A stretch of DNA of 63,135 nt, filler included, from Platydemus manokwari (Eukaryota), in the NCBI GenBank assembly GCA_037951405.1. It is 6 parts of 6 records of this genome, joined end to end, with 100 filler letters (N's around TTAATTAATTAA, not from the genome) between each part and the next. Parts side by side here need not be neighbours in the genome. Positions count along the whole stretch, not along the records: positions 18,112 to 27,184 come from JBBMOY011303762.1; 5 more parts are not named here. One strand, 5' to 3'. Below are positions 18,012-47,101 of the stretch, piece by piece; the first letter of the stretch is position 1; each line of letters starts with the position of its first letter. Both the position numbers and the translations under genes were made by a program. The notes below the pieces were generated by a model. That model was not told the DNA's origin. It saw only the letters and a program-made list of their open reading frames with translations, and made no database searches.

Positions 18012-19987
18012 NNNNNNNNNNNNNNNNNNNNNNNNNNNNNNNNNNNNNNNNNNNNTTAATTAATTAANNNNNNNNNNNNNNNNNNNNNNNNNNNNNNNNN
18101 NNNNNNNNNNNCATGTAACAAAATAAACATTTGATAATGGTATTTTTAATAATCCACAATTGAAATAGCTATTTAGTTTCTTAACTTGTTAAAATATTGA
18201 GATTATATTTCCAAAAAAACTCAGAATTATAATACATTGTTCGGATTAATAATATTCCAAATTGATCTATATTATTAATCTTTAATTTTTAAAGTTTATT
18301 ACAATGAGTCGTTTTATTATATTGACAATGATAAACTCGTTTTTGACTAAGAAAATAAAAATTGTGATTAATTATTTAATTTAACGATTAATATAAAATT
18401 TTGAAGCTATTTATGAAATATAAAACGCGCAAATAATTTTCTAATTTCCCAGGTTATTAAATCTGAATAATTGACGGATTCAGATTCACCTTGGAAGTCA
18501 ATAAAATTATATTCAATTAGGAAATGACTTTTCGTCTTTAAAAACAATTGAAATTTTTGCTTCGTGAATCCAATTAGAACCTATTTCACGTTTAAGAATT
18601 TTTATTCCGTAATCCAAAGGATTCATATGCTATTTTAGCTTTGATAAATACATACACACATAGGTATATAACTTGAAAATGTATTCATTTTCGATCACAT
18701 GCACACACAACACAGACACATACATTCATATATATATATAGATGTGTATGTGTATAATTATATATATGTATAATTTTATTGCCTACCGTATAAATTTGGG
18801 AGAAGGTTATGTGTAAATTGTTAGATAACGTATAATATTAAAGGATTTTTTTCTTTAACAAAAAAACATTTTATTTAATCACATTCGGTCTGGTCAAATT
18901 TTTGAAAAGATATCATGCAGCCCATGATTGTCACTGCAAGCATATAACAAAACAATGTGGCCGATTAATAACAATTATTTATTTAAATCGATTGACTAAA
19001 TCAATTAATTGGATTACAAATAAACTACAAATTCCACTTATAAAACAAATCTCATCAGTAAATCGAATGGAAAATATCTTCATTCAGCTTGATTTCATTA
19101 TCACTGATGGGGTAAAATATGAAATATCCGATCCAATAGATGTCAAATAATTCCCGAAATTATTATCATTCAAATCTCATTAAAACCAGTAATTAAAAAT
19201 ACGATGAAGTTGCCATATTAAAATTTGATTTGCTGACTTTAAAAAACCCGTTGTCATATTGTGTGAATTTAGATCTCATCGAATCTCATAATCCCAACAA
19301 CTGAAATGGATTTTCAAATAATCGAAACAAATTATTGGGAATTATTTTATGATCAACTGGATATGTTAAATTTTTTTTTATTCATAATTATTCATTTCCG
19401 TGTTGTTTTAGACGTAAAAGAAATATAATAATATTTGTGGCGGTTATGAATAATTGAACAATATTTCAGACGAATTATTGGGAAGCTGATAAATCAGTAG
19501 TGAAATGACAATAATCTAATTATGTCCAATTCGAATCGACTTCATATTCATGAAAACATAAAGCATTCGTTGATGAATACTTTTATCAAACAGTAATGCT
19601 TGAAAGTTATTTAGTATTTTCTTCCCATATTATTTCAAACTTTGATTTCATAAAAATTACCAAAAATACACACGGTTTTTTTATAATCGATAAATTTAAA
19701 AATAATTTTATTAACATATTTGATAATAATATTTATTGTCAAATAAAATTTCAAAAGATGCGGCTATCAAAAGCGTCGGTTTTTAAATCGGTTCTTTGAT
19801 TATTTTGCTACAGTAGTTCATTCATCCATTCATCACGTCGTTCCTATGATAATTAAATACTTATTATCATTTAAATAAAGATGATATCATATTATAGTTA
19901 TTCTTAATTCTTAAAAAACAAAAATCAACTATTAATGATCAATATCGATTAACAGCTATATCGATATTAATTTTCGGTTGTTTGGAT

Positions 19988-20515
19988 TGTTACGATATTT
20001 ACTAGTGTTAAATACCAAAATTATAATCTAGGATCACAATAATTTACAAAACCAAATCATCAGATAATAACACTCTCAATAGTCAAATCAATAAACAACC
20101 CAAGCGGGATCAGCATCGGGAAGATAAATAGTGACAGATAAAGGCTGGTTGCTGGAAAATCACATAAACGTCATACAAATCATGGTTACCGATTAAAAGA
20201 GCATAGTAGATGCTCTTGATATTCAACTTCTTTTATAGGCTCATCTTGTGTATTCACTCGATGTCTCATGGCTTTATTTGTCGTTTCGATGGTTTATAGG
20301 CAAATTGTCTTTCATTTCTCTGGTCATTGGAGTTTCTCAATGTTTATTGTTTGTTACTGCTGTGTGCCAGTTAATTATCGAGTTCTATACATGGATTGAT
20401 ATATAGGGTGAATCTGGTTAGTAATTGGCACGTTTGATTATCAAATCTCTATGTATTGACTATCTGTGAGTTATATTTATGGTTTCTGTAGATATTTTTG
20501 CTTGTTTTTAGGACA
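19988..20515 (-). mobile_element. Solo-LTR-like repeat
   Basis: Starts TGTTACG and ends GGACA. Core TCAACTTCTTTTATAGG and GTGCCAGTT are shared with the family. A-rich left half and T-rich right half. No clear target site duplication. Confidence 0.45.
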
Positions 20516-23500
20516 CACCAACAGAATAAATTATTATTTGAAAGTTAATACGTACATTGTATGACAGTTAATGTACTTCAGTCAACGAAAACTTAAAGAA
20601 AATTGTTAAAACATGTACTTCCTCCAAAATACAATTACAATATTAATCGAAGTTGAACCAATTTCGTTGAAAATGATTCCACAGTCTGAGGTTCTTGATA
20701 AGTGATTTGAAATACCAAGTTAAAAGTGGATTAACTCTAGTAGACAATAAAAGTTGGGACCGTTTCAGTTTGAAGCAACTGATGGCTGTTGATCTTAATT
20801 TCTGAAATATTAAAAATGTATGAACCTAAAGATACGATGTAGAGTTTGTTATTTCACTACTCATAATAACCTATGGCGTTAAGTATAGGTATATGCAACG
20901 TTAGGTGTACTATTCTGCCCTCCTAAACAATTAACTAAGCTCTGACTCCAAAAATAGAAGGCAAAAACTATATGTCAATTGAGTACTGCTCACTACGATT
21001 TACAAAACAATTATACCTGACATACTCTTCCACAAATAAATACAATTTGGCTTCCAATTAGCAGTTCGTCACCTTTACATCGGTATTTATATTCGAGATT
21101 TGTGTGTAATTTTTGTGTCATGTTGTATCACATTTTGATTTGATCTTTGCTTTTTCATGTTTCTTTTTGGGCTTTTATGGTTTTTGTGTGAGTGGGATTA
21201 GTCAATCTCTATGTGTGTGTTACTGTGTCCCATTTTCCAATTGTCGTTTACCATCTAAGTCCACTGTGATTGGCTGATTGCTATACCTGTATAGTTGTGT
21301 AGGCATGCAAATATTTAAACTGCGTTAAAAACGTTCAAAGGTGCAAATCCATTTTTCTTTTTGCAGAATTTCATTTTACTCAACAGTACAATTAAATATA
21401 TGCATTTCAAAATACTCGCGATTGTATCATTGTGTCAGTATCCTATTTCAATTATTTAACTGATTCTGATCAAAAAACGTTTTCAATTATTAAAAAATGG
21501 CTGCTTTGATAGACTGGAAATAAAACTTTACTAGAGGAATACCTTGGAAAAAGAAATACGTTGACGACTTTCGCAATTTCTCGTAATTGGATTAAATGGT
21601 GGAATGCCGAATTACAAACTGTTAATCAATACCTCACCCGAATATTGAAACAACTTAAGAAGCATTGAATTAAAATTTCTACTTCACAACATATCGTCAG
21701 TTCAAACAAATTACCATATTCAATAATAACAAACGTAATCTGTTATGAATTAGTTTAATATATTCAGTAGAATCCATAGAAAATAATTTATTGACTGACA
21801 TTTTATCTGACAAAAGAAATTAGTCAAACAATATCACTTGACAAAGCAATTCAATTTGCAATTAAAGGCTGAGAATTTCATAATATTAGCTCTTAATAAT
21901 AAAGTGCTTTGTTATTTCAGGCTTTTGCAGTTTAAGTATTTTTGAGCTTTTAAACATGACTAAGAATAAAAGCTGATCTGAATCTTCTGATTAAATCCAC
22001 TATGGATTTTTTTCAAATGACAAATTGAAATATAAATATGGATGAGATTGTTGGTGCAAATGTTGATGAAATGATATTTTAAACTTCTTAAACAAAATAA
22101 TTCAGATAAACACGACAATATAAGTAATTTGTGAGAAAATATATAAATATATAAAAATTATTTGAAATGATATATTTTATAGCAAAAGGAAATGAAAGAA
22201 CTCTTATGAAAACATTAAATTAAGGTGCCTTATTAGAAAAATAACAAATTATCATCGATGGATTTTAACAAGCATAAATAATTACATGATCTTTTTCCAA
22301 TTTATTTCTTTTGTCGATATTTTTTTTAATATCTGTTTTCATTAACAAAATTCTTTGTTTAATATATCTGATTTGATTTGGAATATAAAGTTTAAATAAT
22401 AAAAATAATATTAATGAGTTTAATGGAATATTTATATTGTTGAGAAATAATTCTACCTAAATTCGTGTATAAAATATTAACTTAATTGAGATAACAGGTT
22501 AATATGTCCCAAAATTTACTATCCCGATAGGGTCCAGATAAAAGCAGAATCTACAATAGAAATATACACATCGCCTGAGTATAAATAATGAAGCAATCAT
22601 CCGTGATAGATTTTAGATGTACCAATGCAAAGTGGTTATCGATAAGAATTCACATATCTGAGTTCTTCATCAAAACCATTTTATTTGAGAAATGAAACTC
22701 AAGTTACCAACAAGACAACAATAAAACGATTTTATCAAACAGATATTAATTAAATGACCTGGAATTTCTAGGTCGAGATTTTTTTTATTGAACTCATCAC
22801 ATGCCTTTCACAATCAAAGCTAAACGGCCAATATGATGAACATATGATAAAATCGCATATAATGCTTGTGATATTAGTTTATAATTATAATATATTGTTT
22901 TTATTGTAGTTAGAATCATAGCTGCGGAGAGCGCCATCAACATAGTCGATTCCATCTTGAACTCTTACCTGAACTCTTAAAATTTTTTATTATTTTATTT
23001 AATTAACTGGCATAACTTAATCTATGACAGTGAGTCGAATGACTTGATTTTTAAGCATCTTCACGAAAAAAATAAAGATGATTATGAAGTATTCTGTATA
23101 TTCATCTAGTCATAAATAAGTATCCAATAAATTGAAGTTTCTCAAATCCATTGCCGGTTCGATTAAATTATTCCTCTCCTTGGCGATTTGTTCTCTATTC
23201 AATAAAACACAACTCAACATACATCCGATATCGGGATTTAATTCTCACCTCTGTTTAAAATTTACTTCGAAAATCATAATATTATAAAGATTCGAGGGAG
23301 CAAGTACTGAACTCACATCGTGAATTTATCAAAGATATAACACGAGATTTTCTCATTTTGCTACTTTTCGCTAATTTTTAAATGCTCTGGCTACTATGGC
23401 AACCCATATCGATTTACGAATGAGTCTTAACACATATTATATCATTATATATTTATTCACTTCTTCTCGGTACCAGCTTGCATTCATCTCATTTTAACTT

Positions 23501-23851
23501 GGGATCTGAAAAGGTATTTGAATCATATTTCACCTTGGTCATGTTCGTAAAGATTTGTGAGTCATAGAAGACTTAGTTTACACTGTTTTTGATATATATG
23601 TGATATTTGCAATTAATATTTTCAAATAAATCGGGCCTAGATATCAGTGCAGTCATCCGTTACGATATGATGATCATTGAAAAATATATTTTAATTTTTA
23701 AATCCATAATCTTTCAAGCATAAATCATTTGTTTTCAATCATCGCACTGATCCGATCTAATATTAATCAATCATGGCTCAGAATCTCACACAAAATCAAC
23801 TGCAGTCACAAAATACGATTCAGAAACAAATAAAAAATTTCGTTCTATCAT

Positions 23852-23852
<1 letters not shown>

Positions 23853-23894
<42 letters not shown>
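23853..23894. repeat. (AAT)n microsatellite
   Basis: Perfect AAT run seen directly. Confidence 0.95.
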
Positions 23895-23896
<2 letters not shown>

Positions 23897-24219
23897 TCTA
23901 ATTAGATTTTTAATAAAAAATCGTCCAGGTAAAACCAAATGGATTGTTATTTCTCGTTCACATTTATCGGTGATTATACAACCGTATTATGCAATATCAA
24001 TTATCGTGCTGGAAAATAGATTTATTTCGATTTGAATAGATTTAATTTTACTCGACCTTTGACACAAAAATTTTTATTCGCCTCAGTCACTTTTAATCAA
24101 CCCCAACAAATTAATTGAAATCAATCTGCTAAGCTTAATAAATACCGTTTCATTGAATTTGAACACACAATCACCAGACACGCATACCCGTGCGCACACA
24201 TATTATTTCGTTAAGTTAA

Positions 24220-26094
24220 ATGGGTGTATGCTTCTCTATTAAACCTATATTTATGATAAAGCTAATCGATAACAAACATAAATCATTAAATTGTTATTTT
24301 TTTTATTTTGAAATGAAATATCCAATCAAATCGAAAGAAGGTTTTCCAATTTTGACAACAGACAATGCCGCTATCCCTCTCCATGGAATAAAGGATATTT
24401 TTGCAATAGCTTCTAAAGAAGAACATATCGGTCTTTGTAATAAACTCGGTATTGATTTTTCTGACGATTGTTTAACATTGACATTTAAAGAACGTGGTAA
24501 TGCTTATAAACTACCCGATGAAGATCGAAATATAATCGATGAAAATGAAAGTGAACATGCATTCACTTTGATATTTCGACCAGTCATAATTGATGGCAAA
24601 TTGCCTTTGAAGATTTCTTTAAATCTTGATGAATGCACCGGACAACCGTTGGTGAATTTCCTTGGTGAAATTCGATTTCAAAACAGCAAAAATCTCGAAG
24701 TCATAATTCCGCTGACAGGACGTGGAACTGCAGCATTGGAAGGTAAAGTTAATGATGCTCATTCAGGACTTTGTACTAGTGGTAGTTGTGCCAGTTTTCA
24801 AGAACGTGTTGCCATACTCTCAGCTGTTTTGGCATGCTTTGATATATCGAGAGATGAGATTGAAATATTCAGAAATCACATTTTGAAAGCGTGTAATTTA
24901 TTTTACGGTACGGAAGAAATATTAAGTTACACAATCGATAAAGCTTTCAGCCTGACCAATGAAACATATTTCGATTTCATGAAACGTGTTTATGCCGACA
25001 TTGACGAAGATAAGGCACCAATAATGTTGAACCATTTCATCGATTTTGGCGAACCTCATCCATTATATTTCTATGAATTGACAGTGCATATGACATCAGA
25101 AGAAATCGATAGCGAACTGAAAGAAATATCATCCGCTTCTCGCGGACCGGATCATAGACCGATTTCTCCCAAAGTTCGAGATATTATCAACAAATTCATC
25201 TTATCGGATGAAATTTATTTGGTTAAGCCTTATCCGGGAAATTTCACCATTAATTTTGGTAATGAGATTTTTAATATTTATGATGTCGCTAATGAATTTA
25301 ATTCAAATTCTCTGGAAAGAGTGTTCGCAATTTTAGAGAAAATGGGAGTGATTATCAATAACGATTCAGTCATCGTATCATTTGTTGAAAGCGGTAAAAA
25401 ATATGCGGCAAACAAAAATAAAATGGAGATCAGTGATCACATTTCTGATGAGATTTTTCAATTGACACTCAAGAGAAAATCTCATTCAACGGAGTCTTTG
25501 ATGAAATTAAAAATATTTCTTGATATCAAACCAATTGATAACGTTAATTTCTTTGGGAAAATTGAGATTAAAAATTCATTTCTCAACAAACTGGCAATTC
25601 CATTGGTGGGACGAGGTACAGTTGCATTAGATGGATCATTGCAAGACAAACACAAAGGTTTCTGCACATCAGGACATTGTGCATCGTTTTTGCAGAGAGT
25701 AGCAATTATATATTGTTCATTGGTTCTTTTAGATGTCGATTCGAATGATTTGAACATTTTTGAAACCAATATTAGATCGATAAATAATCGATTTCACGGT
25801 CGACATCACATTGTTGATTATATCATTAAAGCTATGAAAGCCGAAGAATCGGAAACATATTTCGAGTACATGAAAAAGACTAATATGGATTATTCTGCAA
25901 TGCCTATCGTACTGAAAACGATAATCACTTATAATCGACTGCCTTCGCGATATTATGAGGATTTAATTGCTAATTATACCGAAGAAGAATTATTAAAAGA
26001 AGAACAGTTGTTTGATAAATCAAGGTCATTAAATTTCTTTTTTGCAGCAATTCGCCAAGCTCGTTTATTCATCAAAAATATCGACATATTTTGA
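24220..26094 (+). CDS. Intronless hypothetical protein with two tandem copies of an unrecognised ~297-aa domain; more likely start is ATG 24313 (593 aa)
   Basis: A 1875-nt open frame in very AT-rich DNA. Internal repeat with a constant 891-nt offset (VNFLG at 24652 vs VNFFG at 25543; CTSGSC at 24772 vs CTSGHC at 25663). Confidence 0.9.
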   Translation: MGVCFSIKPIFMIKLIDNKHKSLNCYFFYFEMKYPIKSKEGFPILTTDNAAIPLHGIKDIFAIASKEEHIGLCNKLGIDFSDDCLTLTFKERGNAYKLPDEDRNIIDENESEHAFTLIFRPVIIDGKLPLKISLNLDECTGQPLVNFLGEIRFQNSKNLEVIIPLTGRGTAALEGKVNDAHSGLCTSGSCASFQERVAILSAVLACFDISRDEIEIFRNHILKACNLFYGTEEILSYTIDKAFSLTNETYFDFMKRVYADIDEDKAPIMLNHFIDFGEPHPLYFYELTVHMTSEEIDSELKEISSASRGPDHRPISPKVRDIINKFILSDEIYLVKPYPGNFTINFGNEIFNIYDVANEFNSNSLERVFAILEKMGVIINNDSVIVSFVESGKKYAANKNKMEISDHISDEIFQLTLKRKSHSTESLMKLKIFLDIKPIDNVNFFGKIEIKNSFLNKLAIPLVGRGTVALDGSLQDKHKGFCTSGHCASFLQRVAIIYCSLVLLDVDSNDLNIFETNIRSINNRFHGRHHIVDYIIKAMKAEESETYFEYMKKTNMDYSAMPIVLKTIITYNRLPSRYYEDLIANYTEEELLKEEQLFDKSRSLNFFFAAIRQARLFIKNIDIF

Positions 26095-29000
26095 ATGATA
26101 GATTCGTTTTCTAGCCCACAATATAAAATGCAGAGATTACAGTACTTGGTATTAGTAACGTGGTCATAGATTTACAATTTGCTTTCAGCGTGCTTGATAA
26201 ATATTATCAATATTTCTTGATATTTTATTTTTATTGTTAAAATTATAATATTATGAGAAAAAAAATGACATGGACTGTGTGATCTTAAAGGCAAATCAAA
26301 CAATAATTTTATTCATATCAGCTTTGTAAATCACGCTTGACTGCGTGTTGTATGAATGAAAAAATTATTTATTCTTGATAAAATTCTTAGACAGATATTG
26401 AGCCTTATATTTAATATCGTTGATATAAAGATAAAAATACAGCACTGAAAATATTGCGATAAGTTTTAGAGAATTCAATTGATTTTACAGCATTTTTTGT
26501 CCACGAGAATTTTGATGCATAACTTTGTCTGGTCCAGATAAAAAAAATCCTGGCATTTACAAACATATTTTTGGGAAATAGTTTCGACATCATCGTGTTA
26601 ATTGGAGTTGACATTTGACCAGTGGTTAATAGATAAAAACATTGTAGAGAATGATTGCACCGGACGACAAATTTTTCTTTATCAAGAAATTTGATTGTTT
26701 CGAATAAATATTTATTTGATAAAACAATATATTTTCTAATACGTCATGCTAGATTGATATGTATGTGTGTGTTGATATTTTTTCTGGTACACAATCAATA
26801 TCGTTATCAGACTATTTCGATTGTTTTCATAAATAATAATCGAAAAAAATGATTTATCAATGGTATTGTCATGAATTATTCGTCAAAATACAAAACACTT
26901 AAACAATTATCTGTGTGAGATATTTTATTAAAATTTAATTCAGAATTAATTTTAATTTTATAAAAAGTTAAATAAATGTAAAATTGGAAATATTTGTTTA
27001 AATATTTGGATTTAAAATAGATTGATTGTGCCTTGACTTTTTTTGGTTTGATTTTAATGTGTGGTTTTTAAAATAGTAGCGGCTAACATGGCGACCAAGC
27101 ATCTGGAATCGAGCTTGCAAAGATCAACGAATGCAAATTATAAAAGAAGATTTTAGAGAAGATATAAAATGAGATATAAAACAANNNNNNNNNNNNNNNN
27201 NNNNNNNNNNNNNNNNNNNNNNNNNNNNTTAATTAATTAANNNNNNNNNNNNNNNNNNNNNNNNNNNNNNNNNNNNNNNNNNNNTTAATATTGATATTAT
27301 AATTACACTTCATATTATTATCATAATAATTATTATTAATAATGATCAAANNNNNNNNNNNNNNNNNNNNNNNNNNNNNNNNNNNNNNNNNNNNNNNNNN
27401 NNNNNNNNNNNNNNNNNNNNNNNNNNNNNNNNNNNNNNNNNNNNNNNNNNNNNNNNNNNNNNNNNNNNNNNNNNNNNNNNNNNNNNNNNNNNNNNNNNNN
27501 TATTTCTAGGATAAAATATTTGGCCAGGAATATAAATTGTTTTGTCGATACATTGACATCTATATGACCCTTTTAAAGATGTTTTCTTCATTATTTTCAT
27601 CATACAATTATTCAGTTCTTGTTGTACTTTATCATTATCGAAAACCCGTAGTTAAAACCGATATATTATGTTTTATTCAATGTTGATATGTAGAACAAAA
27701 TTACCACCTCAACCGATTTATGGTTGACGAGATTCGTTGTAATGATGCCATCATCAAATCAATGGACCGGTAATTGTAAGCGGTTTATTTATGACCATCA
27801 TTAATTCGAAATGAAATGTAAGAGTCTGTGTTCAATAAATTGAGACGTAATTCAATATGCGATATGAAATAAGAACATTTTAACGTTTTAGCTTGTCAGA
27901 GTTTTATTACGATTTTGAAATTGACGATGTCAATATCAATAATAATTAATCGGCCATTCCTGCCCATTTAATTTACTTTATTTTAATTATTATAATTGTC
28001 ATAATTATTATCATTATCAATAATATTATTAATATTATTATTATTGATTTTATTATTATGTCATTATTATTATTATTAACTCGAATATTATTAATGCTAT
28101 TCATAACACACATAATTCATTATTATATTTAAAAAGTGGAGGACAATAATTACCTTTATATTTTCAACGAATGACAACTTGGAACAATGTTTCGATTTCC
28201 TTTTTGTTCTTGGAACTCTGTTTGTACCATTTAGTCTTTTCTTATTTTCTGTTTTGACTTCATTTTCATTAGTTTTACTGGTCGACTATTTGACAATTTT
28301 ACCGAATTGAATTTTTCTTTAAGAGATAAACATTTCCTCTTCTGATATCTTATATTATAGTGCTATGCCTTCGAGTATATTGATTAATTTTTGTTGGAAT
28401 TCGCACTACTTCATTTTAATATTCGATTAACATTACATTGATAAAGGCCTTTAAAAAATATTGATTCATTGAAAACAAAGATTTGGTCTTTTAATCAATA
28501 ATTTTTAATTTAATATATAAACGAAACCATAGCAACATCTAAGATTTATCGTTAACTTTACGATAATTATAAGAATATTTTTATCATTATTACTATTATT
28601 ACAAAATAAGTTTTGATTCGTATTTATATAATTATTTCTATAAACTTAAATTACTTATACTTCCATGATATTAAATGCTGCAATAAATTAATAAACATAG
28701 TGAATCTAAATTTAATTATAACTGACGTTTGTGTTTCAATGACGAATTATAGATTTTTACTTTATCATTTTATTTGTAGTTTAATCCATGGTTTTCAGAC
28801 ATGCAGATACCATTGTACATTCGCCTTATTTGGCAGGAATAACAAATGAGTTCTATTAATGATGTACCAATTAAGTGATGGTACAGAAGTATTTTACTAG
28901 AGTGCTCATAACTATGTATTAAAGTCTGTTTCCGAAATACTGTAATACATGTGATCACAAGAATTGACAGACAGGTATGTGTGTATGGATACTAATGAAT

Positions 29001-38552: not shown

Positions 38553-41500
38553 ATACTTTGATTTTGTAAGCTAAATTTCTGCAATGGAATATTACGTTTA
38601 TTGGATCAAATATATTTTTGATATTTTTTGGAGTTTGGAAATATTATTTTGGTTCTATGAATGAATATTTAACCTCATCTGGAATTACACACTGTATATT
38701 TTATAAATATAATCAGATTCAGAGGCAACGCATGGTTACCGGAACTTTTGACATAATCACTTTCAAACATCTAGTGACACCTCAGGTTTCTGTCAGTTAT
38801 TGCTCTAAGATCAGTTCGATCTGATCAGAACCACAAACAATAGAATCATTATTAATAAATTCAATTATTTTTAAAGTCTGATTATCAGTAATCGATTTTA
38901 TTATTTTATTTCATTATTGCATTCACTGCAGTTGTATTTTATTTATTATCTTTTTGATGAATTCAAAAATAAGTAACAAAGATAAATCAAATGAGTATGA
39001 AAGATAAAGTAAAACAAAATAAACAAGTAAAATACAATGTTAAGAATAAACAAATTAAATGCAATTTGATATTAACTAAAATATGATTACATAAAATAAA
39101 ATTAAACGATATTTAAACAAAATGGAATTAAATTATTATTAATTAAGAACTTGACATTAAAAGTAAAATATTTAAAAGGTTATATTAATTATTAGGGTTA
39201 ACAAAATAGTGCAAATATGGAATTTGCAGATAATAATAACAATTACCGTCTATTTCAGGTTATTAGAATAAATAGATAGAAGGTTCATGCTATAGTAAGT
39301 ATGAACAACAGGATGCACACAGAAGGGATGTGCAAGGTGAAAATAAGTATATAAAGAGCGAGCTTACTCTTTGTTTTACCCATTCAACAAGAAACTTCGA
39401 GAGTAGGATATTATTTGTTGTTATAGTAGCTTGCCCTGCAACAAGTGCAGTTGTACGGAATTACAAGTATTGTAAAAGTATTTTGTTTTGCCATTAGCAG
39501 TGCGCTTATCCGCATAGTAATGTATTGTTGTGTAATTATAACCAGGAGTAAATTCTTAGCTAAGGTATTCAGAAGAGGTATCGGGACTTGGCCCTAATCT
39601 TATTAACATAGCTTTTTAGGGCATTAAGCTCCCTCAGTGTAATTTATGGGAGTGAAGTGTTATACAAATATTTCTTAATCAGAAAGACGTATTTGTTTTT
39701 ACTTATTGTGCACCGGAATTTGAATAGGAGTCAGATTAGGAGAATAAAGCCGAGCCGTTAAGTTAGAGTAGTTCTAACATTAACATTTTAAATTTTTTTA
39801 TGTTTTATATATTTACTAATTTTATTTATTTAGAAATTAACGTCATATGGTGTCATTGAGTACTCCTGCTGGAGTCAGATTATTAATCAACTATAATGTC
39901 ACATTGTTCAGAGATTTTTCCAACTCGTGCATTTACACGTAAAAACTCCAACATTTATTTATTTTTGAAAGAGATCATTTATATTTTCATAAATATATCT
40001 TAATACCTCATGTGGCTTAGCAACAATATTAAGAAAAACGATTGTCACAGAATTGTTCATTTACTGGTGGATTTTCAAATCATGATTATCGAATATTTGT
40101 AATCAACTTCCACTCTTCCATTTAGTCATTGAAGAGTATAGAAAAAGTTATCAATAGACATTCTATGGATTCCATTGGATAAAAATTTCGCTTTTATCGC
40201 ATTGTTTTTATTCACTTTCATTCATAATAGCTATGTTCAAGGTCATTAATCGAAATATAAATCAGTACGGCCTTAATAATTTTCAGATTCTCATTCTACT
40301 ATTTAAATAAATAATTTGTTTTATATTTTCAAAGGTTATTGGAAATGATTTTGACTACCAACAATCGAAAAATATCCCTTCATAGAATTTCGTTGAAAGC
40401 CAATTGGATCTTTACATTGGTTTCGTTCTGGAGTATCTACTTGAATACCCATCATGTAGAACACCCATTTTAAAAATTTAATGAATCTAGTTATTAATTC
40501 AATATTTATTTATTATTTTGTTTATTAAATTCGATCCATGATTTATTTAGCGATAGAATTTTCGATGATCTACTTCATCTATCAATCAACTAAATAATTT
40601 TCGGGGGATTTATTTATTCTGCCTTTTTGATTTTCACACATATATTTAGTACAAATGGTGTTTACCAAATTGTCCTTGAATAATTTCATATAATCGTAAC
40701 AGCTATTGTGAAGTTATCAAACTATTGATAGAAGTATCTTTTTAGAGAGTTACTTATTTGATACCATTTCAGTACCAATTGTCACAGTATGAGACTTTTA
40801 TCTCTCATTGAGATTCTTATTGAGTTGATTCTGTTCTAGAAATCTAATGTTGAATTAAATATTTCGCCATGAATACAATCGAAACGATTTATTTCATGTT
40901 CAAGCATAAAAATCTTATTCATACCCTAGGGGTAATACATATTTTTTCGAAATTATTTAACATTTCTCACAGATATCTTCAATCATTTGATAGCTCATAT
41001 TAAAAATGAATTTAGCCAATGCACTTATAAATAAAATAAAACCCACTTATGGTTTCAAATCAGCACAATCCTCTCAATGATTGTAGTTGGCTATGTTTTG
41101 TTATCTTCAAAGAAATAATGACGAATCACAAGAAGATAAAGATGTGATAATCGGAATAATATTTTTCTCTAATATTAGATATTAATATATTGGTCTGTAT
41201 GACGAATAAAGATTTATAATATCATTGTTTCATTTCTTTCACTCATTAACAAAGGATAAGCAAATTACGCCTCCGAGTTTTATGAGCAAAATCTATTTGA
41301 TTAATTAGAATATATTGAATCTATCCGGTACTAAGAAATTATTTAATTGGGATAAATAGATTTATCATTCATTGAACCCACCAAGTACAGCAGAATGATC
41401 TAATGATCATTTATCCCATGCAATGTTTTACAATGATATCATTATCAACAATCAATCGAGCCACGGAATTGTCATTGAAATATAATTCTATGTTCTATTG

Positions 41501-41754
41501 TTTCGAACTAATTATCTCGAATAAAAATAAAAGCAAACCGAATAGGTATTTAAGTATTTTAATAAAAATATATCTATTTGAGAATAAATTATCAACAAAT
41601 ATTTGTGAAGGATATCGCAATAAACAGAATATCGGTTTTGTTGTTAATGGAAAGGAATTATGCTCACCCATTATCGCTTAAGAGACCTCCTTAGCAGTTT
41701 TGGGAAAGGAGGTCATGTCATATAAAATGATTAATTTCAAGAAAATTAATTATA

Positions 41755-41881
41755 TTAGGTTGGTGCAAAAATAATGGCCTTTTTTAAATTGGCTTTTCAT
41801 TTTTAATATTAAATTGAAGATCTTATGAAAATTATTCATATAATATATCATTTTAAAGCTTTCTTTGTGCTCTGTTGTTTA
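41755..41881 (+). mobile_element. Mariner (cecropia/Hsmar1-like) transposon end, remainder lost in gap
   Basis: TA followed by TTAGGTTGGTGCAAAAATAATGGCCTTTT, close to the Hsmar1/MADE1 terminal inverted repeat TTAGGTTGGTGCAAAAGTAATTGCGGTTTT as I recall it. It runs directly into an N gap. Confidence 0.8.
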
Positions 41882-44800
41882 NNNNNNNNNNNNNNNNNNN
41901 NNNNNNNNNNNNNNNNNNNNNNNNNTTAATTAATTAANNNNNNNNNNNNNNNNNNNNNNNNNNNNNNNNNNNNNNNNNNNNGATAATGTTGAGCTTATGT
42001 TACATCAAAACATGTTGTCATTTTAATATTTTAGTTTCGAAAAAAATCCTTAACCATCAACATTAATATATCTAACTAGATTTGAACATAAGGTTTTATT
42101 TGAAAAATATGAAGTTAAAATTTATTGATGAGTTCAACAAAGTCAACAACCAAGTAAAAATAATTCCATTGTGAATATTTCAATTCATAACTCGATACTA
42201 TTATAAACATTATCGAGCTTTGGTTACCCAAACAACAGTCATTAAGTTACTATGAGAAAAAGTCAGTCTCCTTGAATAGGAGGACCTCTTTTAGGAATTC
42301 AATCTCTTAAGTCAATATCAACTTCCTTTCTCCTAACCGGTATAAAATATTTTGTCTATAATATTATCTGTGCTACAAATTCTGAAAATAACAACATTAT
42401 ATGTGTGAGAATTAATTTAAATTAACTAATAATAAATTTAAATAATGGCTTTAATAAAATAATTTTAAATAAAAATTTCAATAAAATTTTTTTATTATAG
42501 TTTAAGATAATAAATTTTAAAAATAACAAATAATGTTTTAAAATTTATGGTTTAGAATAAAATAATTAGAAAATTATTTAAATATTTTTATCTATGCCTG
42601 ATTAAGATTGATAATGAAATCTCTCTAGTAAAGGAATTATAATTTGTTTAAAAAATTGTATTAAGTGTTGTAATTAAATAAATTCTAAGAAACATCAATA
42701 ACAAGTGAACTAGCCGCTACTGACAATATGAAAAAGGGATGATTTGGTGAAGATAATTCAAATATATTATAATTTGTTGCCTTTATCTTCTCTTCTTCAC
42801 TAATGCTATTATAATTAAAACAGCAGCATTTATTTTATCATTGAAATTATAAAATAAAGTTATTAATTCAAATTCTAGATTACATATACTGTTATCTGGG
42901 CCAATAAAAATATTGATGTTAAATGAAATTACTGCCAAATTAATTATTTAAAATTTATAAAAATTTATCTAAGATTAAATTTATAGTCAGGATAGTTTTT
43001 ATAGTTGTTTTTCAGCGGTAATGATTAGTCAAACTAGATCTGTCAATATTTATTTAAGTTTTTCTTGTAATTTACAATAAGATGTGTTAATTTTTTAACA
43101 TTTATTTTCTCCATCAATCCATCTATCTAAATTTAATCACCACTTGATTAAATGATATTGGAATTATATTAAACAACTTTTGATATTAATCGAGATAATA
43201 TAAAATGAAATAAAAAATAAAAGAGAGTACCCAATTGATATTCGAATAGGCTGATTTTAAAGGATTTCAAGTGTTCATTCGATTATTTTTAAATTTAATA
43301 AAAATTTATGAAATATTTCATAGATTAATGAAACTATAATATTTTCAACTCTAATTCTCTATGATTTTCTTTCTTCGTTTGTGTGAAATTTTATAATGAA
43401 TTTTAATTTGAAAAATGATAAAATTAGATTTTTATATAATATTAATTTGTTAGAATTATTGTAATTAAAATATAATTTGGTGTCGTAACTTTTCATTTCG
43501 TTTTCCATGTGTGATTTAAAAAAGTGAAACTACTTCCATGGGGACCACGTAATTGGGTCCGATTCTGAGAATGTGTATAGCATGGAAGTATAGAGTAGAA
43601 TGAGTAAAATATATAAAAGGTGTGAGGAACATATAGAGATGTTATAGAGAAAAGATAAATTGGAGAAGAAATAGAAATTTTTATAAAAATAAATATATAG
43701 AGAATTTTCAGGTATAATTAATAATTCAGAAAAAATTAAAGATTTTAATGAAACTGGGATGTGAGGGTTTTATAATAAATTGAATTTTGAAAATATTAAT
43801 TTGAATAATTGTAATTAAAATATATTCGGATGTCTTGATTTTTCACTTTATTTTCAATGCGTAATTTATTAAAGACTAGCTGATTACAATATGATAAAGG
43901 CTAAACATTGTATATATAAGAACACTATTGTTTTATATATTTCCATGTTTCTCTAAATGATAAAAAGAAAACTGATCGAAAACGTTACATTTGTTGGATA
44001 TTCTGATAAAACAATTGATGAAGGTTGAAAAATCTGTAATAAATAACAATTAATATGTTGGGTTGTGGTAGATGTTTATTTTTTATTTGCTGTTCAAAAC
44101 AACTCAACATCGTGAGTCCCTTGGTTATTTGTTTGATATATATTAACAATACACGAACAATATATCAAAAACTTTTATTTAAATAAAACAATCAAATACA
44201 ATGGTTTGACTCAATGTAGTTTAACTCACACAAGTTTAGGTGAAAACAAATTTAGTATGGTTATCTCACCGAGACCGTGAGAACCAGAAAAATTAACCTT
44301 AAAAATTTAGTATAGATTTTAATAAAGTTTTTTATGTTGCTCCAAAGGGAGAACCTTCAGAGAATAATCATAATTCGTTAAAAAACAAATTAATGCTAAA
44401 AATTATCGATTTTTTTTACTTAGATCTATTTCTCTCAACGTTTGATATTCGTCTGATCGTCGTATTGAAATTTTTATGAGTGAATTGTGATGGAAATCCG
44501 TCAGCTTATATAGATGCCGGGATTCAGTACTTTGCACCTAGGAATTTCCATCACTCTTAAAAATTTTAAACAATTTTTTCACGTTGGATCTTCAATGTTT
44601 ATAATTATAAAAGTTCTAAACCTTAAAAATTCTTAATAACTTAACTAACCTTATAAATTTTATTACTAAATTTTTGACATTAAAAATTAAATATCTTATT
44701 TCTTTTTCACTCTTTGTTATTTCTTTGATTTATAAATAATAATATATATAAATTTATATTTCGTTCCTCAAAAACAAATCATAATTCATAATCGAAATCC

Positions 44801-45139
44801 AGATAATTACAAAATATTCAATATCAATATTGGATCGAAAATGTTCACGATAAAAATAATAAATTACAAAATTTTCATTAATGTTAGATCAAATATTAAC
44901 AAAAATGTTCAAGATTAATATGTTCATCAATTATAAAATATCAGCTCAAAATTAGGATCACATCAAGTCAAAATATTGGATTGATTGGATTGATCACTGG
45001 GATTTGACTCCTTCAATTCGCATATGAGAATTTTTACTGACATCAAGCGTCTAGCTCCACGCTCCAGCTTTGGGTGGCCCATGTTTCCCATTTCGGGCCT
45101 GATTTTATGGGTTTAATTACTATTGTGTCGGGTTTTCAA

Positions 45140-45409
45140 CTATCGGTGCTCCGGGTCTTTTGGGTTTTTGTCTTGGGGGTGTTTTTGGTCTTTTAAACAC
45201 ATCGCGCTTGTTGATGGTTGTGAATTTTCTTGTGAGGGTTTGTGTGGCTTTTGGGATGGCTTGTTTGGCTGTTTTTGAGACTGTTGATTTTGGGACTGTT
45301 TTTTGGACAGCTGTTGTTGCTGTCTCCACTCACTGTATGTCTTAATAGTATATGGGATTTTTTTGTCCTCGTTCTCTTCACTATCTGAATAGAGCACAAG
45401 ACGTTCCAT
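45140..45409 (-). CDS. Small Q/K/P/S-rich ORF within an LTR-like insertion (possibly frameshifted remnant)
   Basis: ATG lies about 65-70 nt downstream of a CTATAAAAAG box. Acidic N-terminus MERLVLYSDSEENED. The region is more GC-rich than its flanks, but low complexity inflates ORF length. Confidence 0.3.
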   Translation of the reverse strand: MERLVLYSDSEENEDKKIPYTIKTYSEWRQQQQLSKKQSQNQQSQKQPNKPSQKPHKPSQENSQPSTSAMCLKDQKHPQDKNPKDPEHR

Positions 45410-45510
45410 GCTATCCCAACACTTACATTGTAGACTCTGATAGGAGGAGGTTGATTAATGGGGCGATTTCATCTTTTTATAGAGGAAAGATATAGAGGAT
45501 GAGTTCACTG

Positions 45511-45546
45511 AGCCAGTTGTTGATTGATAGCTAGTTGTTGATTGAT
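45511..45546. repeat. 18-bp tandem direct repeat (2 copies) upstream of a minus-strand TATA box
   Basis: AGCCAGTTGTTGATTGAT followed by AGCTAGTTGTTGATTGAT. Confidence 0.85.
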
Positions 45547-46750
45547 TTGATGGGTTGTTTGATCCCCATCCCATTCTGTAACAGTTAATAAATATTTATT
45601 TTATAAATATAGAAACAATTAACAATCAGAACAAGAGACAATTTTGAGTTTGGAGTTTACCATTCAAAATTGAATATTTTTGAACAATTCATTAGTATGT
45701 AGCACAATTTTAAATTTGGACAATTTGAAGTTTGAATAATGTGGAGTTTTGACCATTGGTAATTAATGGTGAACTTTGAAATTATTATACTGTTGTTACA
45801 ATAAAACTTCATCTACGAAATTACTGTTCAGGATTCTAATAATTCTAATTTTAAGACAAGCCCAATCTATAATGAAAAAGAATAGGTTTATAGATTAGCC
45901 ACACAATGATAGTCATATTGAAATAAATATCAGAAAATTTATTCAAAGTTAAATATTGAGTGACCCATGTTCTCTTTCAATCGAAGAAATAATGGTTCAT
46001 TTGTTTTCAAAGTCACGTACAGTTTGAGCTAACCTATGTGATTGAGTTTATATTAAGTGTGGTATTAAGTTAAATATTTTTAAAATCAATTGTGTTTAAA
46101 TTTTAGTTTATAACTTTTCTCAACAAATAAATAGTCCCGATTAAGATTAAAAATAAAGAGTAAACAATAAATGAATCTGAAAAATTATTGAAACGGAAAA
46201 AATATTTTTCTGAACCAAAAAGATAATCAGTATTCGAACTAACAAATACACTTTTAATAATATCTTGATTATATCACACTAACATTATATTTTTATATTG
46301 GTATTGAATAATCTAAATATGAATAGTTATTTGATTTAACGATTTCAAATGTAATAACAAAATGTAATAAAATTGAACAAAATAAATAACAAAAAATTTT
46401 GAAATTCATTTATTCGTTGGAAAGTGTGTCATAAAAAATTAAAAATTTTAGAAATTTACTAATTTTTATCATTTTGATTTCTGCTTAAAATCATTAAAAA
46501 ATATTCCTCACGTTCATTTGAAATTCTCGTTTGACATGCTAATTTAATACTTTGATTGAAATCATATATAAAAATATAGAATTTCAAAGATCTGACAATT
46601 AACTATTAAATTATGAAATTATCAAAAAGCATTTGTCTTGTTTAAAATATTATTAGTTTATTTCGGCCATGTTATAATAACTTAATTTTTGTCTTAGTTT
46701 AATGAGATGTTATATTTTCGGCAGGATTACTTTAAATGTTTATGTTTTAG

Positions 46751-47101
<351 letters not shown>

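What the first reader, a model, noticed from the sequence alone, without database searches (positions are those of the whole stretch)
24220..26094. Intronless orphan gene made of two tandem copies of an unrecognised enzyme-like domain (GRGT...D-x-H-x-G-x-C-T-S-G-x-C-A-S-F)
Seen: the halves align without gaps over about 110 aa at an exact 297-codon offset (VNFLGEI..NS......IPLTGRGTAALEG...DAHSGLCTSGSCASFQERVAI...ETYFDFMK vs VNFFGKI..NS......IPLVGRGTVALDG...DKHKGFCTSGHCASFLQRVAI...ETYFEYMK). The rest is highly diverged, so the duplication is old and the core is under constraint. There is no clear signal peptide or membrane-spanning architecture from ATG 24313, and no intron over 1.8 kb while neighbouring genes are split into short exons. 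Inference: the conserved Gly-rich loop plus His/Cys/Cys cluster could be a metal-binding or catalytic site in a pseudo-dimeric enzyme. Lack of introns would fit horizontal (bacterial or viral) acquisition or retroposition. I recognise no family. This is the best candidate for a new system in the window.
Basis: partly seen in the sequence, partly recalled or inferred. Interest (0 to 1): 0.85.

Follow-up and report, generated by a model that had tools for sequence, protein, structure and literature searches.

The report
New two-copy domain shared with cyanobacteria
This is a real, conserved, intron-free gene made of two copies of an unnamed protein domain with no recognisable fold; its only other relatives are in acoel worms and a few other eukaryotes, and in filamentous cyanobacteria, where the single-copy form always sits inside an NLR-like immune or cell-death gene cluster.

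Summary
ORF 24220-26094 (+) is real. Its conserved start is ATG 24313 (593 aa). Its two halves are homologous (BLASTP E 3e-38), at a 297-codon offset through the core.

It is not a true orphan. Two roughly 70%-identical orthologues exist, with dN/dS about 0.1. An exhaustive search of 1.84 billion proteins found a tiny family:
- a 4-copy protein in the acoel Convolutriloba macropyga
- a few other eukaryotic sequences
- single-domain "hypothetical proteins" of filamentous, mostly marine cyanobacteria

In every cyanobacterial locus long enough to judge, the gene sits between an AAA-HEAT STAND NTPase and a NACHT-HEAT-WD40 NTPase. A variable first gene lies upstream (caspase-like or CHAT protease fused to GUN4, EAD1/TRADD-N adaptor, or kinase-STAND).

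Best reading: a new domain family, probably acquired from cyanobacteria and duplicated in tandem, acting in an immune or cell-death-type pathway. Family, bacterial context and purifying selection are shown. Function and direction of transfer are inferred.

The parts
24313..26094 (+). Coding sequence, 593 aa plus stop, single exon
   Evidence: The ORF is. The start is fixed by orthologues P0001 and P0002, which begin here and have upstream in-frame stops. dN/dS is 0.10-0.12.
24220..24312 (+). In-frame upstream extension of 31 codons, probably untranslated leader
   Evidence: It is absent from both orthologues, whose frames are closed 3 and 20 codons upstream of the shared ATG.
24313..25200 (+). 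Domain copy 1 (aa 1-296)
   Evidence: Family HMM matches aa 1-296 (independent E 7e-136; the window's own halves were among the HMM seeds). AF2 of aa 1-276 gives pLDDT 91.7 and pTM 0.91. This copy keeps Asp71/Arg72 and Gln163 but has lost the Asn194/His198/Arg200 (FHGR) motif.
25201..26091 (+). Domain copy 2 (aa 297-593)
   Evidence: Family HMM matches aa 302-593 (independent E 3e-131; the window's own halves were among the HMM seeds). This copy keeps the FHGR motif but has lost Asp71/Arg72, Gln163 and Tyr227 equivalents. It is the slower-evolving half against L001 (dN/dS 0.06 versus 0.16), less clearly so between L001 and L002 (0.105 versus 0.125).
24709..24807 (+). Core motif of copy 1: P-L-T-G-R-G-T-A-A-L-E-G ... 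D-A-H ... C-T-S-G-S-C-A-S-F-Q-E-R
   Evidence: Translation. It contains the family's invariant Pro133, Gly136, Gly138 and Phe162, and near-invariant Arg137, Thr139, Asp148, His150, Cys159 and Arg165. It is modelled as an ordered loop running into the first bundle helix.
25600..25698 (+). Core motif of copy 2
   Evidence: Translation. It holds the same conserved positions at an offset of 297 residues.
26026..26091 (+). C-terminal 22-residue tail, hydrophobic and basic, outside the repeated domain
   Evidence: Translation. It is conserved in both orthologues and absent from cyanobacterial members. Other eukaryotic members carry a C-terminal membrane anchor (P0007) or a Cys-rich tail (P0006) at this place.

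Best explanation
The gene encodes a cytosolic protein built from two tandem copies of a roughly 270-aa domain. The domain belongs to a very small, unnamed family and has a fold not seen in solved structures: two N-terminal helices, a beta-rich lobe, an ordered Gly-rich loop, then a seven-helix bundle.

The ancestral form is a single-domain protein of filamentous cyanobacteria. There it is the constant middle gene of a conserved cluster:
- a variable first gene (orthocaspase or CHAT protease fused to GUN4, EAD1/TRADD-N adaptor, or Ser/Thr kinase-STAND)
- an AAA-HEAT STAND NTPase
- this protein
- a NACHT-HEAT-WD40 NTPase

This is an NLR-like conflict or cell-death system of the type described in multicellular bacteria.

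Most likely the domain passed from such cyanobacteria into eukaryotes and became a resident gene. It was then duplicated in tandem independently in this lineage (2 copies) and in acoels (4 copies), giving a single-chain version of what is probably an oligomer.

I infer that it still acts as a regulated module of an innate immune or cell-death-type pathway. Its functional centre would be the conserved loop (Arg137, Thr139, Asp148, His150, Cys159, Arg165) together with the His198-Gly-Arg200 motif. The two copies have lost complementary subsets of the conserved polar residues, which suggests they work as one unit.

Shown: the gene is real, the duplication, purifying selection, family membership, the bacterial gene context, and the absence of a known family or fold match. 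Inferred: direction of transfer, oligomeric logic and function.
For: Gene reality and constraint:
- ORF and internal repeat.
- Two orthologues at 72% and 69% identity.
- dN/dS 0.10-0.12 with dS above 1.2.
- Even genomic read depth of about 14x across the gene and both flanks in the one run that holds it.

Family:
- Exhaustive phmmer over 1.84 billion representatives found 9 hits at E<=1e-3, one of them spurious.
- Named members are XP_075252651.1 of Convolutriloba macropyga and cyanobacterial hypothetical proteins MEO0969885.1, BAY85896.1, WP_027845469.1 and MCL2936337.1.
- There are 14 genome loci, all filamentous cyanobacteria and including the nearly complete chromosome of Calothrix parasitica NIES-267, and 7 metagenome loci.

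Bacterial context:
- The neighbours are the same, on the same strand, in every locus long enough to judge.
- Pfam assignments of the neighbours: Pkinase+AAA_35, AAA_35+HEAT, NACHT+HEAT+WD40, Peptidase_C14+GUN4, CHAT+GUN4, EAD1+TRADD-like_N+GUN4, EAD1+Trypsin_2, and FHA+Trans_reg_C.
- Such systems are described as conflict systems of multicellular bacteria in PMC7159879 and PMC8195603.

Fold:
- AF2 gives pLDDT 91.7 and pTM 0.91.
- Foldseek against PDB gives a best E of 0.027 at TM 0.11.
- BFVD gives nothing.
- The ESM Atlas gives TM of 0.28 or less.

Duplication and residency:
- Window copies 1 and 2 are sisters (96/94), apart from the acoel copies.
- The gene is single-exon here; the acoel gene has one intron; another eukaryotic contig shows a GT donor inside the domain.
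- Complementary loss of conserved residues in the two copies.
Against: - No function has been tested for any member.
- No expression evidence for this gene. No RNA run holds it, and I could not tell whether the orthologue contigs are transcripts.
- In the window the gene stands alone. No STAND NTPase or protease is recognisable in the 9 kb, so the bacterial context may not carry over.
- The tree only splits cyanobacterial from eukaryotic rows (86/91). It has no outgroup, so it cannot give a donor, and long branches make the eukaryotic part star-like.
- Sub-domains were not searched separately, so each lobe might have a known fold.
- I could not verify the organism of the window.
Confidence: 0.55

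Rival explanations
1. Protease- or kinase-triggered executioner, working like a gasdermin but with a different fold. After the NLR-like NTPases sense an invader, the Arg/Lys-specific orthocaspase, CHAT or trypsin-like protease of the cluster cuts the exposed Gly-Arg-Gly-Thr loop at the invariant Arg137; in kinase-type clusters Thr139 is phosphorylated instead. This frees the C-terminal helical bundle, whose first helix is Ala/Val/Leu-rich, to damage the membrane. In animals a host protease would do the same to the tandem protein.
For: - Arg137 and Thr139 are 97% conserved, flanked by invariant Gly residues, in a loop just before a strongly hydrophobic helix (ALVLAVAAAAGA-type in cyanobacteria).
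- Peptidase_C14, CHAT or Trypsin_2 genes are in or next to many clusters, and FHA plus a kinase in the others.
- Orthocaspases and metacaspases cut after Arg/Lys (PMC5756287).
- Bacterial gasdermins are encoded next to caspase-like proteases that activate them (10.1101/2021.06.07.447441).
- The NTPases of the cluster have no N-terminal effector domain of their own; NACHT starts at about aa 47 and AAA_35 at about aa 31.
- Some eukaryotic members carry C-terminal membrane anchors.
Against: - No gasdermin-like or other pore-former fold match.
- A mere cleavage site rarely needs invariant Pro, Gly and Gly plus some 15 further conserved polar residues.
- The Calothrix/Mastigocoleus-type clusters have no protease gene.
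- The hydrophobic helix is about 17 residues long and is modelled as buried.
- No experiment exists.
Confidence: 0.15
2. One reading: a pseudo-dimeric enzyme whose Gly-rich loop and His/Cys/Cys cluster form a metal-binding or catalytic site, with a biochemical role of its own, for example making or modifying a small molecule or a protein.
For: - Many conserved polar residues for a 270-aa domain: Glu60, Asp71, Arg72, Asn115, Arg137, Thr139, Glu143, Asp148, His150, Cys159, Gln163, Arg165, Asn194, His198, Arg200, Tyr206, Tyr219 and Glu264.
- Nearly all bacterial members (17 of 18) keep two cysteines, at shifted positions: 154+159 or 159+161. This fits a metal site or redox pair.
- Gly-rich loops leading into a helix often bind phosphate or metal (general knowledge).
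Against: - Cys154 is not conserved, and several animal copies keep only one Cys or none, although they remain under the same architecture.
- No similarity to any enzyme family or fold.
- The residue geometry was not testable.
- In conflict operons the variable genes, not the constant ones, are usually the enzymes (PMC7159879).
Confidence: 0.2
3. The family is originally eukaryotic, or from an unsampled donor, and cyanobacteria received it; or the eukaryotic genes stem from several separate transfers. On this view the bacterial operon says little about the animal protein.
For: - The tree has no outgroup and shows only one split between cyanobacterial and eukaryotic rows.
- Eukaryotic copies are far more divergent (30% identity or less) than the cyanobacterial ones (48-95%), which could mean greater age.
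- At least four eukaryotic sources carry it, some with introns.
Against: - The single-domain form is embedded in the same operon across several cyanobacterial families: Calotrichaceae, Hapalosiphonaceae, Nostocaceae, Rivulariaceae and Microcoleaceae.
- Among about 15 billion proteins, eukaryotic occurrence is extremely patchy.
- Long eukaryotic branches fit faster evolution after transfer and duplication.
Confidence: 0.08
4. It is not a host gene: contaminant DNA, or a transposon- or virus-borne ORF.
For: It is intronless and isolated in AT-rich DNA, and a very high-copy repeat lies 750 bp downstream.
Against: - Read depth is the same across the gene and its flanks.
- GC3 is 0.29, in line with the AT-rich piece and below the cyanobacterial loci.
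- No terminal repeats, transposase, Pfam or PHROG hit, and no relative on 2.9 million viral contigs.
- Orthologues under purifying selection exist in two other species.
- The acoel homologue lies on a 68.6-Mb chromosome and has an intron.
Confidence: 0.02

Closest known systems
Cyanobacterial hypothetical proteins BAY85896.1 (Calothrix parasitica NIES-267), WP_027845469.1 (Mastigocoleus testarum BC008), MCL2936337.1 (Trichodesmium MAG), MEO0969885.1
   Same: - Same domain over its whole length (phmmer E 6e-24 from one half of the window protein; 25-35% identity).
- Same VNF-G, P-x-x-G-R-G-T-x-A-L-E-G, D-x-H, C-A-S-F-x-x-R, FHGR and EEL motifs.
   Different: - They have one domain of 267-288 aa, not two.
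- They are encoded inside a STAND-NTPase, protease or kinase operon.
- They lack the C-terminal tail.
- The helix after the motif is much richer in Ala.
- All are annotated only as hypothetical.
Convolutriloba macropyga XP_075252651.1 (acoel; 1393 aa) and the related Logan protein P0003
   Same: - A eukaryotic, multi-copy tandem arrangement of the same domain.
- Almost intron-free, with one 3.4-kb intron and a 3.8-kb second exon.
   Different: - Four copies with long linkers, and their second copy has lost most conserved residues.
- Their duplications are independent of the one here.
- About 20-30% identity.
NTP-dependent conflict and apoptosis-like systems of multicellular bacteria (Kaur, Burroughs, Iyer, Aravind; PMC7159879, PMC8195603)
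   Same: - The bacterial relatives sit in clusters with NACHT/STAND NTPases, HEAT and WD40 repeats, caspase-like proteases, and EAD1, TRADD-N and GUN4 domains.
- They occur in filamentous cyanobacteria, with variable effector genes around a constant core.
- Those papers also propose lateral spread of such domains into marine metazoans.
   Different: - I found neither this domain nor its accessions in those papers' text or held supplements, nor anywhere in the library.
- The cluster has no vWA-MoxR core.
- The window gene has no such neighbours.
Bacterial gasdermin - protease systems (10.1101/2021.06.07.447441)
   Same: A protein of about 270 aa encoded beside caspase-like, CHAT or trypsin proteases and NLR-like NTPases, so possibly an executioner activated by cleavage. 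This is an analogy of context only.
   Different: - No sequence or fold similarity to gasdermins.
- The conserved polar loop has no counterpart in gasdermins.

Membership tests
Unnamed BAY85896 / XP_075252651-type domain family (defined here) | Significant full-length sequence similarity of each copy to the family | tested here: met
   - phmmer with copy 2: E 4.7e-67 (P0003), 7.5e-59 (P0004), 6.1e-24 (P0005), 1.7e-20 (P0006).
- Both copies match a family HMM end to end, though both were among its seeds.
Unnamed BAY85896 / XP_075252651-type domain family (defined here) | Invariant Asn115, Gly118, Pro133, Gly136, Gly138 and Phe162, and near-invariant Arg137, Thr139, Asp148, His150, Cys159, Arg165, Tyr206 and Glu264 | tested here: met
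   All are present in both copies of the window protein.
Unnamed BAY85896 / XP_075252651-type domain family (defined here) | Asn194 ... Phe-His198-Gly-Arg200 motif in the second bundle helix region | tested here: inconclusive
   Present in copy 2 (N, H, R) but replaced in copy 1 (C, Y, T), and likewise in both orthologues.
Unnamed BAY85896 / XP_075252651-type domain family (defined here) | Encoded between an AAA-HEAT STAND NTPase and a NACHT-HEAT-WD40 NTPase | tested here: not met
   This holds for all cyanobacterial loci long enough to judge. In the window no other gene is recognisable within 6 kb upstream or 1 kb downstream. The feature belongs to the bacterial branch only.
Gasdermin | Gasdermin N-terminal pore-forming fold, or a Pfam gasdermin match | tested here: not met
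Death-fold, TRADD-N and EAD adaptor domains of conflict systems | Pfam or structural match to Death, TRADD_N, TRADD-like_N or EAD models | tested here: not met
   The neighbour proteins hit EAD1 and TRADD-like_N. This domain hits none and matches no death-fold structure. hhalign against the first 400 aa of the NACHT-HEAT-WD40 protein and the whole AAA_35-HEAT protein found nothing.
Transposon or viral proteins | Match to a transposase, viral or phage protein family, or presence on viral contigs | tested here: not met
   Pfam, PHROGs, BFVD and the IMG/VR scan were all negative.
   His150 is 91% and Cys159 85% conserved. Cys154 is Val in half of the bacterial members, with a Cys at 161 instead. 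Spatial clustering is not testable because no coordinates are returned.

The most novel reading that the evidence does not exclude
The domain is a new-fold core component of a so-far undescribed NLR-plus-caspase immune or cell-death system of multicellular cyanobacteria. It is either the executioner or the switch that the proteases or kinases act on. It was captured by marine worms and other eukaryotes and turned into a single-chain tandem protein of animal innate immunity or cell death. That would be a further, independent bridge between bacterial and animal death machineries.
Probability: 0.3. Interest if true: 0.9.

Novelty: categorically new. Interest (0 to 1): 0.72.

Why it matters
If the inference holds, this is a protein domain with no known family or fold. 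It links an animal gene to a conserved cyanobacterial gene cluster built from the same parts as animal and plant innate immunity: NACHT/STAND NTPases, WD40 and HEAT sensors, caspase-like proteases, and TRADD-N/EAD adaptors. It would do three things:
- add a new component to bacterial NLR-type systems
- give a clean case of bacterium-to-animal transfer followed by independent tandem duplication
- offer a tractable pair of systems (a cyanobacterial operon and a worm gene) to ask how such modules execute or regulate cell death

The caveat is that 'categorically new' applies to the domain family and fold. The class of bacterial system around it is known, and the function is still inferred.

Tried and rejected
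- AF2 of the whole 624-aa ORF with a 3-sequence alignment gave a poor model (pLDDT 41.7) and was not used.
- Complex prediction of copy 1 with copy 2 gave no verdict: score 0.00, the alignments were not used, and the partner fold was uncertain. It is evidence neither for nor against a pseudo-dimer.
- The protein-atlas search on the window protein and on P0005 gave no usable hit.
It worked with the 6 closest rows.
- No RNA run holds the gene. The single holder is a genomic run, so expression is untested.
- Rfam, tRNA and tandem-repeat scans of the piece gave nothing relevant: one sub-threshold miRNA-like hit and a (TAA)14 array.
- hhalign of the bacterial domain profile against the first 400 aa of the NACHT-HEAT-WD40 protein and the whole AAA_35-HEAT protein found no shared adaptor domain.
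- Searches for the accessions or run ids in papers and supplements found nothing.
- P0010 (1822 aa, DUF5018 repeats) from the phmmer list was rejected as a spurious repeat match.
- The window protein itself is not on record in the contig collection, and I could not establish the organism.
- A caspase-like His...Cys dyad and a GHMP-kinase-like Gly-rich loop were considered from memory. Both were dropped: the spacing and predicted secondary structure do not fit, and there is no fold match.
Full report
**1. The observation**

Within the 9-kb piece (18112-27184; GC 0.22-0.37) there is one long open frame, 24220-26094 on the + strand, of 624 codons. No other stop-free stretch in any frame exceeds 110 codons.

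The two halves of the product are homologous. BLASTP of aa 1-296 against aa 297-593 (numbered from ATG 24313) gives E 3e-38, with 30% identity and 51% positives over 261 residues. In the family alignment the offset between the copies is exactly 297 residues from position 114 to position 227. It is 298-299 before that stretch and 295 after it.

One correction concerns the start. Two orthologues begin at the Met encoded by ATG 24313, and their frames are closed 3 and 20 codons upstream. The first 31 codons of the ORF are therefore probably leader, and the product is 593 aa.

**2. A real, constrained host gene**

A word-indexed search of 5.8 billion proteins found two full-length relatives, P0001 (593 aa, 72% identity) and P0002 (595 aa, 69%). 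Both come from Logan assemblies of other sequencing runs and are colinear with the window ORF apart from one two-residue indel in P0002.

Nei-Gojobori estimates give dN 0.16-0.20, dS above 1.2 (saturated) and dN/dS 0.10-0.12. The second copy is the more constrained against L001: 0.06 against 0.16.

The single public run that holds the stretch is genomic. Its contigs cover the gene and both flanks at an even depth of about 14x and break only at simple repeats. GC3 of the gene is 0.29, in line with the AT-rich piece.

Contamination and a recently arrived mobile element are therefore very unlikely. Expression could not be tested, because no RNA run holds the gene.

**3. Not an orphan: a very small family**

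Pfam (E up to 10), PDB sequences, NCBIfam, PADLOC and PHROGs give nothing for the protein or its relatives.

An exhaustive phmmer run with copy 2 against 1.84 billion cluster representatives found nine proteins at E<=1e-3. One of them, P0010 with DUF5018 repeats, is spurious. The rest are:
- P0003 (1117 aa) and P0004 (1256 aa), each with four copies of the domain
- P0005 (270 aa) and P0006 (317 aa), each with one complete copy
- P0007 (242 aa) and P0008 (171 aa), each carrying part of one copy (the C-terminal and N-terminal part respectively)
- P0009 (179 aa), which lacks the middle of the domain

Cluster look-ups name them. P0004's cluster contains XP_075252651.1, an 'uncharacterized protein' of the acoel Convolutriloba macropyga. 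P0005 is MEO0969885.1 of a cyanobacterial MAG. P0009's cluster is from Trichodesmium.

A pattern scan of one genome per prokaryotic species found 14 loci, all in filamentous cyanobacteria:
- Mastigocoleus testarum BC008
- the nearly complete chromosome of Calothrix parasitica NIES-267
- Okeania, Trichodesmium, Rivularia, Richelia and Nostocaceae

Seven metagenome loci resemble them. None of 2.9 million viral contigs carries the gene. Every named member is annotated 'hypothetical'. None of the accessions appears in the paper library or in the supplements of the two most relevant papers.

**4. Eukaryotic members**

- The acoel gene lies on a 68.6-Mb chromosome. It has two exons: aa 1-127, a 3.4-kb intron, then a 3.8-kb exon for aa 126-1393.
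- P0008 lies on a 2.3-kb contig next to a CCDC113/CCDC96-type ciliary coiled-coil gene. Its frame ends at a CAG|GTGAGC donor directly after the C-A-A-F-Q motif, so this is a eukaryotic gene with an intron at another position.
- P0007 ends in a hydrophobic anchor followed by RRRR, and P0006 ends in a Cys-rich tail.
- The window protein and its orthologues end in a conserved hydrophobic and basic 22-residue tail.

The domain is therefore resident in several eukaryotes and is intron-poor, but not everywhere intron-free.

**5. Bacterial gene context**

In every cyanobacterial locus long enough to judge, the gene (267-288 aa) has the same neighbours on the same strand. Pfam assigns them as follows:
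- Directly upstream: a protein of about 660-1050 aa with an AAA_35/AAA_16 NTPase module and HEAT repeats.
- Directly downstream: a protein of about 950-1280 aa with NACHT starting near residue 47-80, then HEAT and WD40 repeats.
- Further upstream, a variable gene:
  - Ser/Thr kinase fused to AAA_35, preceded by an FHA-Trans_reg_C regulator (Calothrix and Mastigocoleus type)
  - Peptidase_C14-GUN4
  - CHAT-GUN4
  - CHAT-TRADD-like_N-GUN4
  - EAD1-TRADD-like_N-GUN4, with EAD1-Trypsin_2 beside it

This vocabulary of domains, its restriction to filamentous bacteria, and the pattern of 'variable effector gene, constant core' are the marks of the NTP-dependent conflict and apoptosis-like systems described by Kaur et al. 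(PMC7159879, PMC8195603). I did not find this particular cluster or domain in those texts.

Neither NTPase carries an N-terminal effector or adaptor domain. hhalign finds no shared domain between them and this protein.

**6. Structure**

AF2 of the whole ORF with three sequences failed (pLDDT 41.7). AF2 of copy 1 (aa 1-276) with an alignment of 20 domain copies gave pLDDT 91.7 and pTM 0.91, and all five models reached 89.8 or more.

The model consists of:
- two helices (23-44)
- eight strands (47-134)
- a confidently placed loop without regular structure (135-156), which carries G-R-G-T...D-x-H...C
- seven helices (157-275), the first of them strongly hydrophobic

Structure searches found nothing convincing:
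- Foldseek against 350,542 PDB chains: no match at E<=0.001; the best is E 0.027 at TM 0.11.
- BFVD: likewise nothing.
- ESM Atlas representatives: TM of 0.28 or less.

**7. Conservation**

Over 33 domain copies:
- Invariant: Asn115, Pro133, Gly136, Gly138, Phe162 and Ala167.
- At 91-97%: Glu60, Gly118, Arg137, Thr139, Leu142, Asp148, His150, Arg165, Tyr206, Tyr219 and Glu264.
- Invariant in all 18 bacterial rows (15 cyanobacterial genome loci plus three unnamed sequences that group with them) and kept in most eukaryotic ones: Asp71, Arg72, Cys159, Gln163, Asn194, His198 and Arg200.

All but one of these then have a Cys at 161, so two cysteines are nearly always kept but at shifted places. Acoel copies 3 and 4 keep only one, and copy 2 has lost nearly the whole set.

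In the window protein, copy 1 has lost Asn194, His198 and Arg200 (C, Y, T). Copy 2 has lost Asp71, Arg72, Gln163 and Tyr227. Both orthologues share these losses, which suggests the two copies complement each other.

**8. Phylogeny**

An IQ-TREE (LG+C20) tree of 33 domain copies puts all cyanobacterial rows, plus three unnamed cyanobacteria-like sequences, on one side of a branch (86/91). All eukaryotic rows lie on the other side, on long branches that radiate almost as a star.

Window copies 1 and 2, with their orthologous copies, form one group (96/94, flagged as a meeting of long branches). Acoel copies 2, 3 and 4 each pair between the two acoel-type proteins. The 2x and 4x architectures therefore arose independently.

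The tree has no outgroup and shows no nesting, so it does not give the direction of transfer. I favour cyanobacteria to eukaryote for three reasons: the single-domain form is operon-embedded across several cyanobacterial families, eukaryotic occurrence is extremely patchy, and eukaryotic branches are long.

**9. How it most likely works**

Shown: a constrained two-copy protein of a new family whose bacterial members are a constant core gene of an NLR-like cluster.

Inferred, with about 0.55 for the overall picture: the domain is a regulated module of an immune or cell-death-type pathway, it acts as an oligomer that tandem duplication has made single-chain, and its functional centre is the conserved loop plus the FHGR motif.

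Two more specific mechanisms compete:

(a) A gasdermin-like logic (about 0.15). The cluster's proteases are of types that cut after Arg/Lys (orthocaspases and metacaspases, PMC5756287; trypsin-like). The invariant Arg137 sits between invariant glycines just ahead of a hydrophobic helix. In kinase-type clusters, Thr139 with Arg at -2 and an FHA protein upstream would fit phospho-regulation. Bacterial gasdermins give the precedent for an executioner encoded beside caspase-like proteases (10.1101/2021.06.07.447441). There is no fold similarity, however, and the loop is more conserved than a cleavage site needs to be.

This fits the many conserved polar residues and the maintained pair of cysteines. 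It is weakened by the variable Cys154, by single-Cys copies, and by the constant rather than variable position of the gene in the cluster.

**10. Verdict**

The finding is real and more interesting than an orphan ORF. It is a new domain family and probably a new fold, shared only between a handful of eukaryotes and filamentous cyanobacteria, where it belongs to an NLR-like cluster containing caspase-like protease or kinase genes. Function, direction of transfer, the organism of the window and expression remain open.

Noticed in passing
window 26844-27184: Contig word depth in the one genomic run jumps from about 14 to 39,000-55,000 here, with many short divergent contigs and loose ends. This is a very high-copy repeat at the right edge of the piece, about 750 bp downstream of the gene. 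It has no Rfam or tRNA match.
   Followed up: partly
window 23853-23894: A perfect (TAA)14 microsatellite lies 420 bp upstream of the start codon. Genomic contigs break there.
   Followed up: no
L003 5176-5715 (Trichodesmium-type contigs; protein P0013, 179 aa): This is a natural short form of the domain that lacks exactly the middle part (HMM positions 89-181: last strands, G-R-G-T/His/Cys loop and first bundle helix). It still sits in the cluster order GUN4 protein, AAA_16-HEAT, short form, NACHT. The same Trichodesmium MAG also has a full-length copy (L017). It could be a decoy or regulator, or a decaying paralogue.
   Followed up: partly
L032 1725-2240 (Logan ERR14224704): A eukaryotic genomic contig carries a member of the family next to a CCDC113/CCDC96-type ciliary gene. 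The ORF stops at a canonical CAG|GTGAGC donor right after the C-A-A-F-Q motif, so there is an intron inside the domain, at a different place from the acoel intron.
   Followed up: partly
P0007 (JGI 3300030602, L033) and P0006 (L024): These are single-domain members of probable eukaryotic origin with C-terminal additions. P0007 has a hydrophobic tail-anchor followed by RRRR, and P0006 has a Cys-rich CFCCWE end. Both hint at membrane attachment. The window protein has a conserved hydrophobic and basic tail at the same place.
   Followed up: no
L008-L021, first gene of the cyanobacterial clusters: The gene upstream of the AAA-HEAT NTPase is swapped between lineages: Pkinase-AAA_35 with FHA-Trans_reg_C; Peptidase_C14-GUN4; CHAT-GUN4; CHAT-TRADD-like_N-GUN4; and EAD1-TRADD-like_N-GUN4 with EAD1-Trypsin_2. 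The three downstream genes stay constant. I did not find this cluster described in the papers I could search.
   Followed up: partly
L027 6906-10751: In one metagenome locus the NACHT-HEAT-WD40 gene is split into two ORFs (796 and 361 aa). This may be a frameshift or an assembly error.
   Followed up: no
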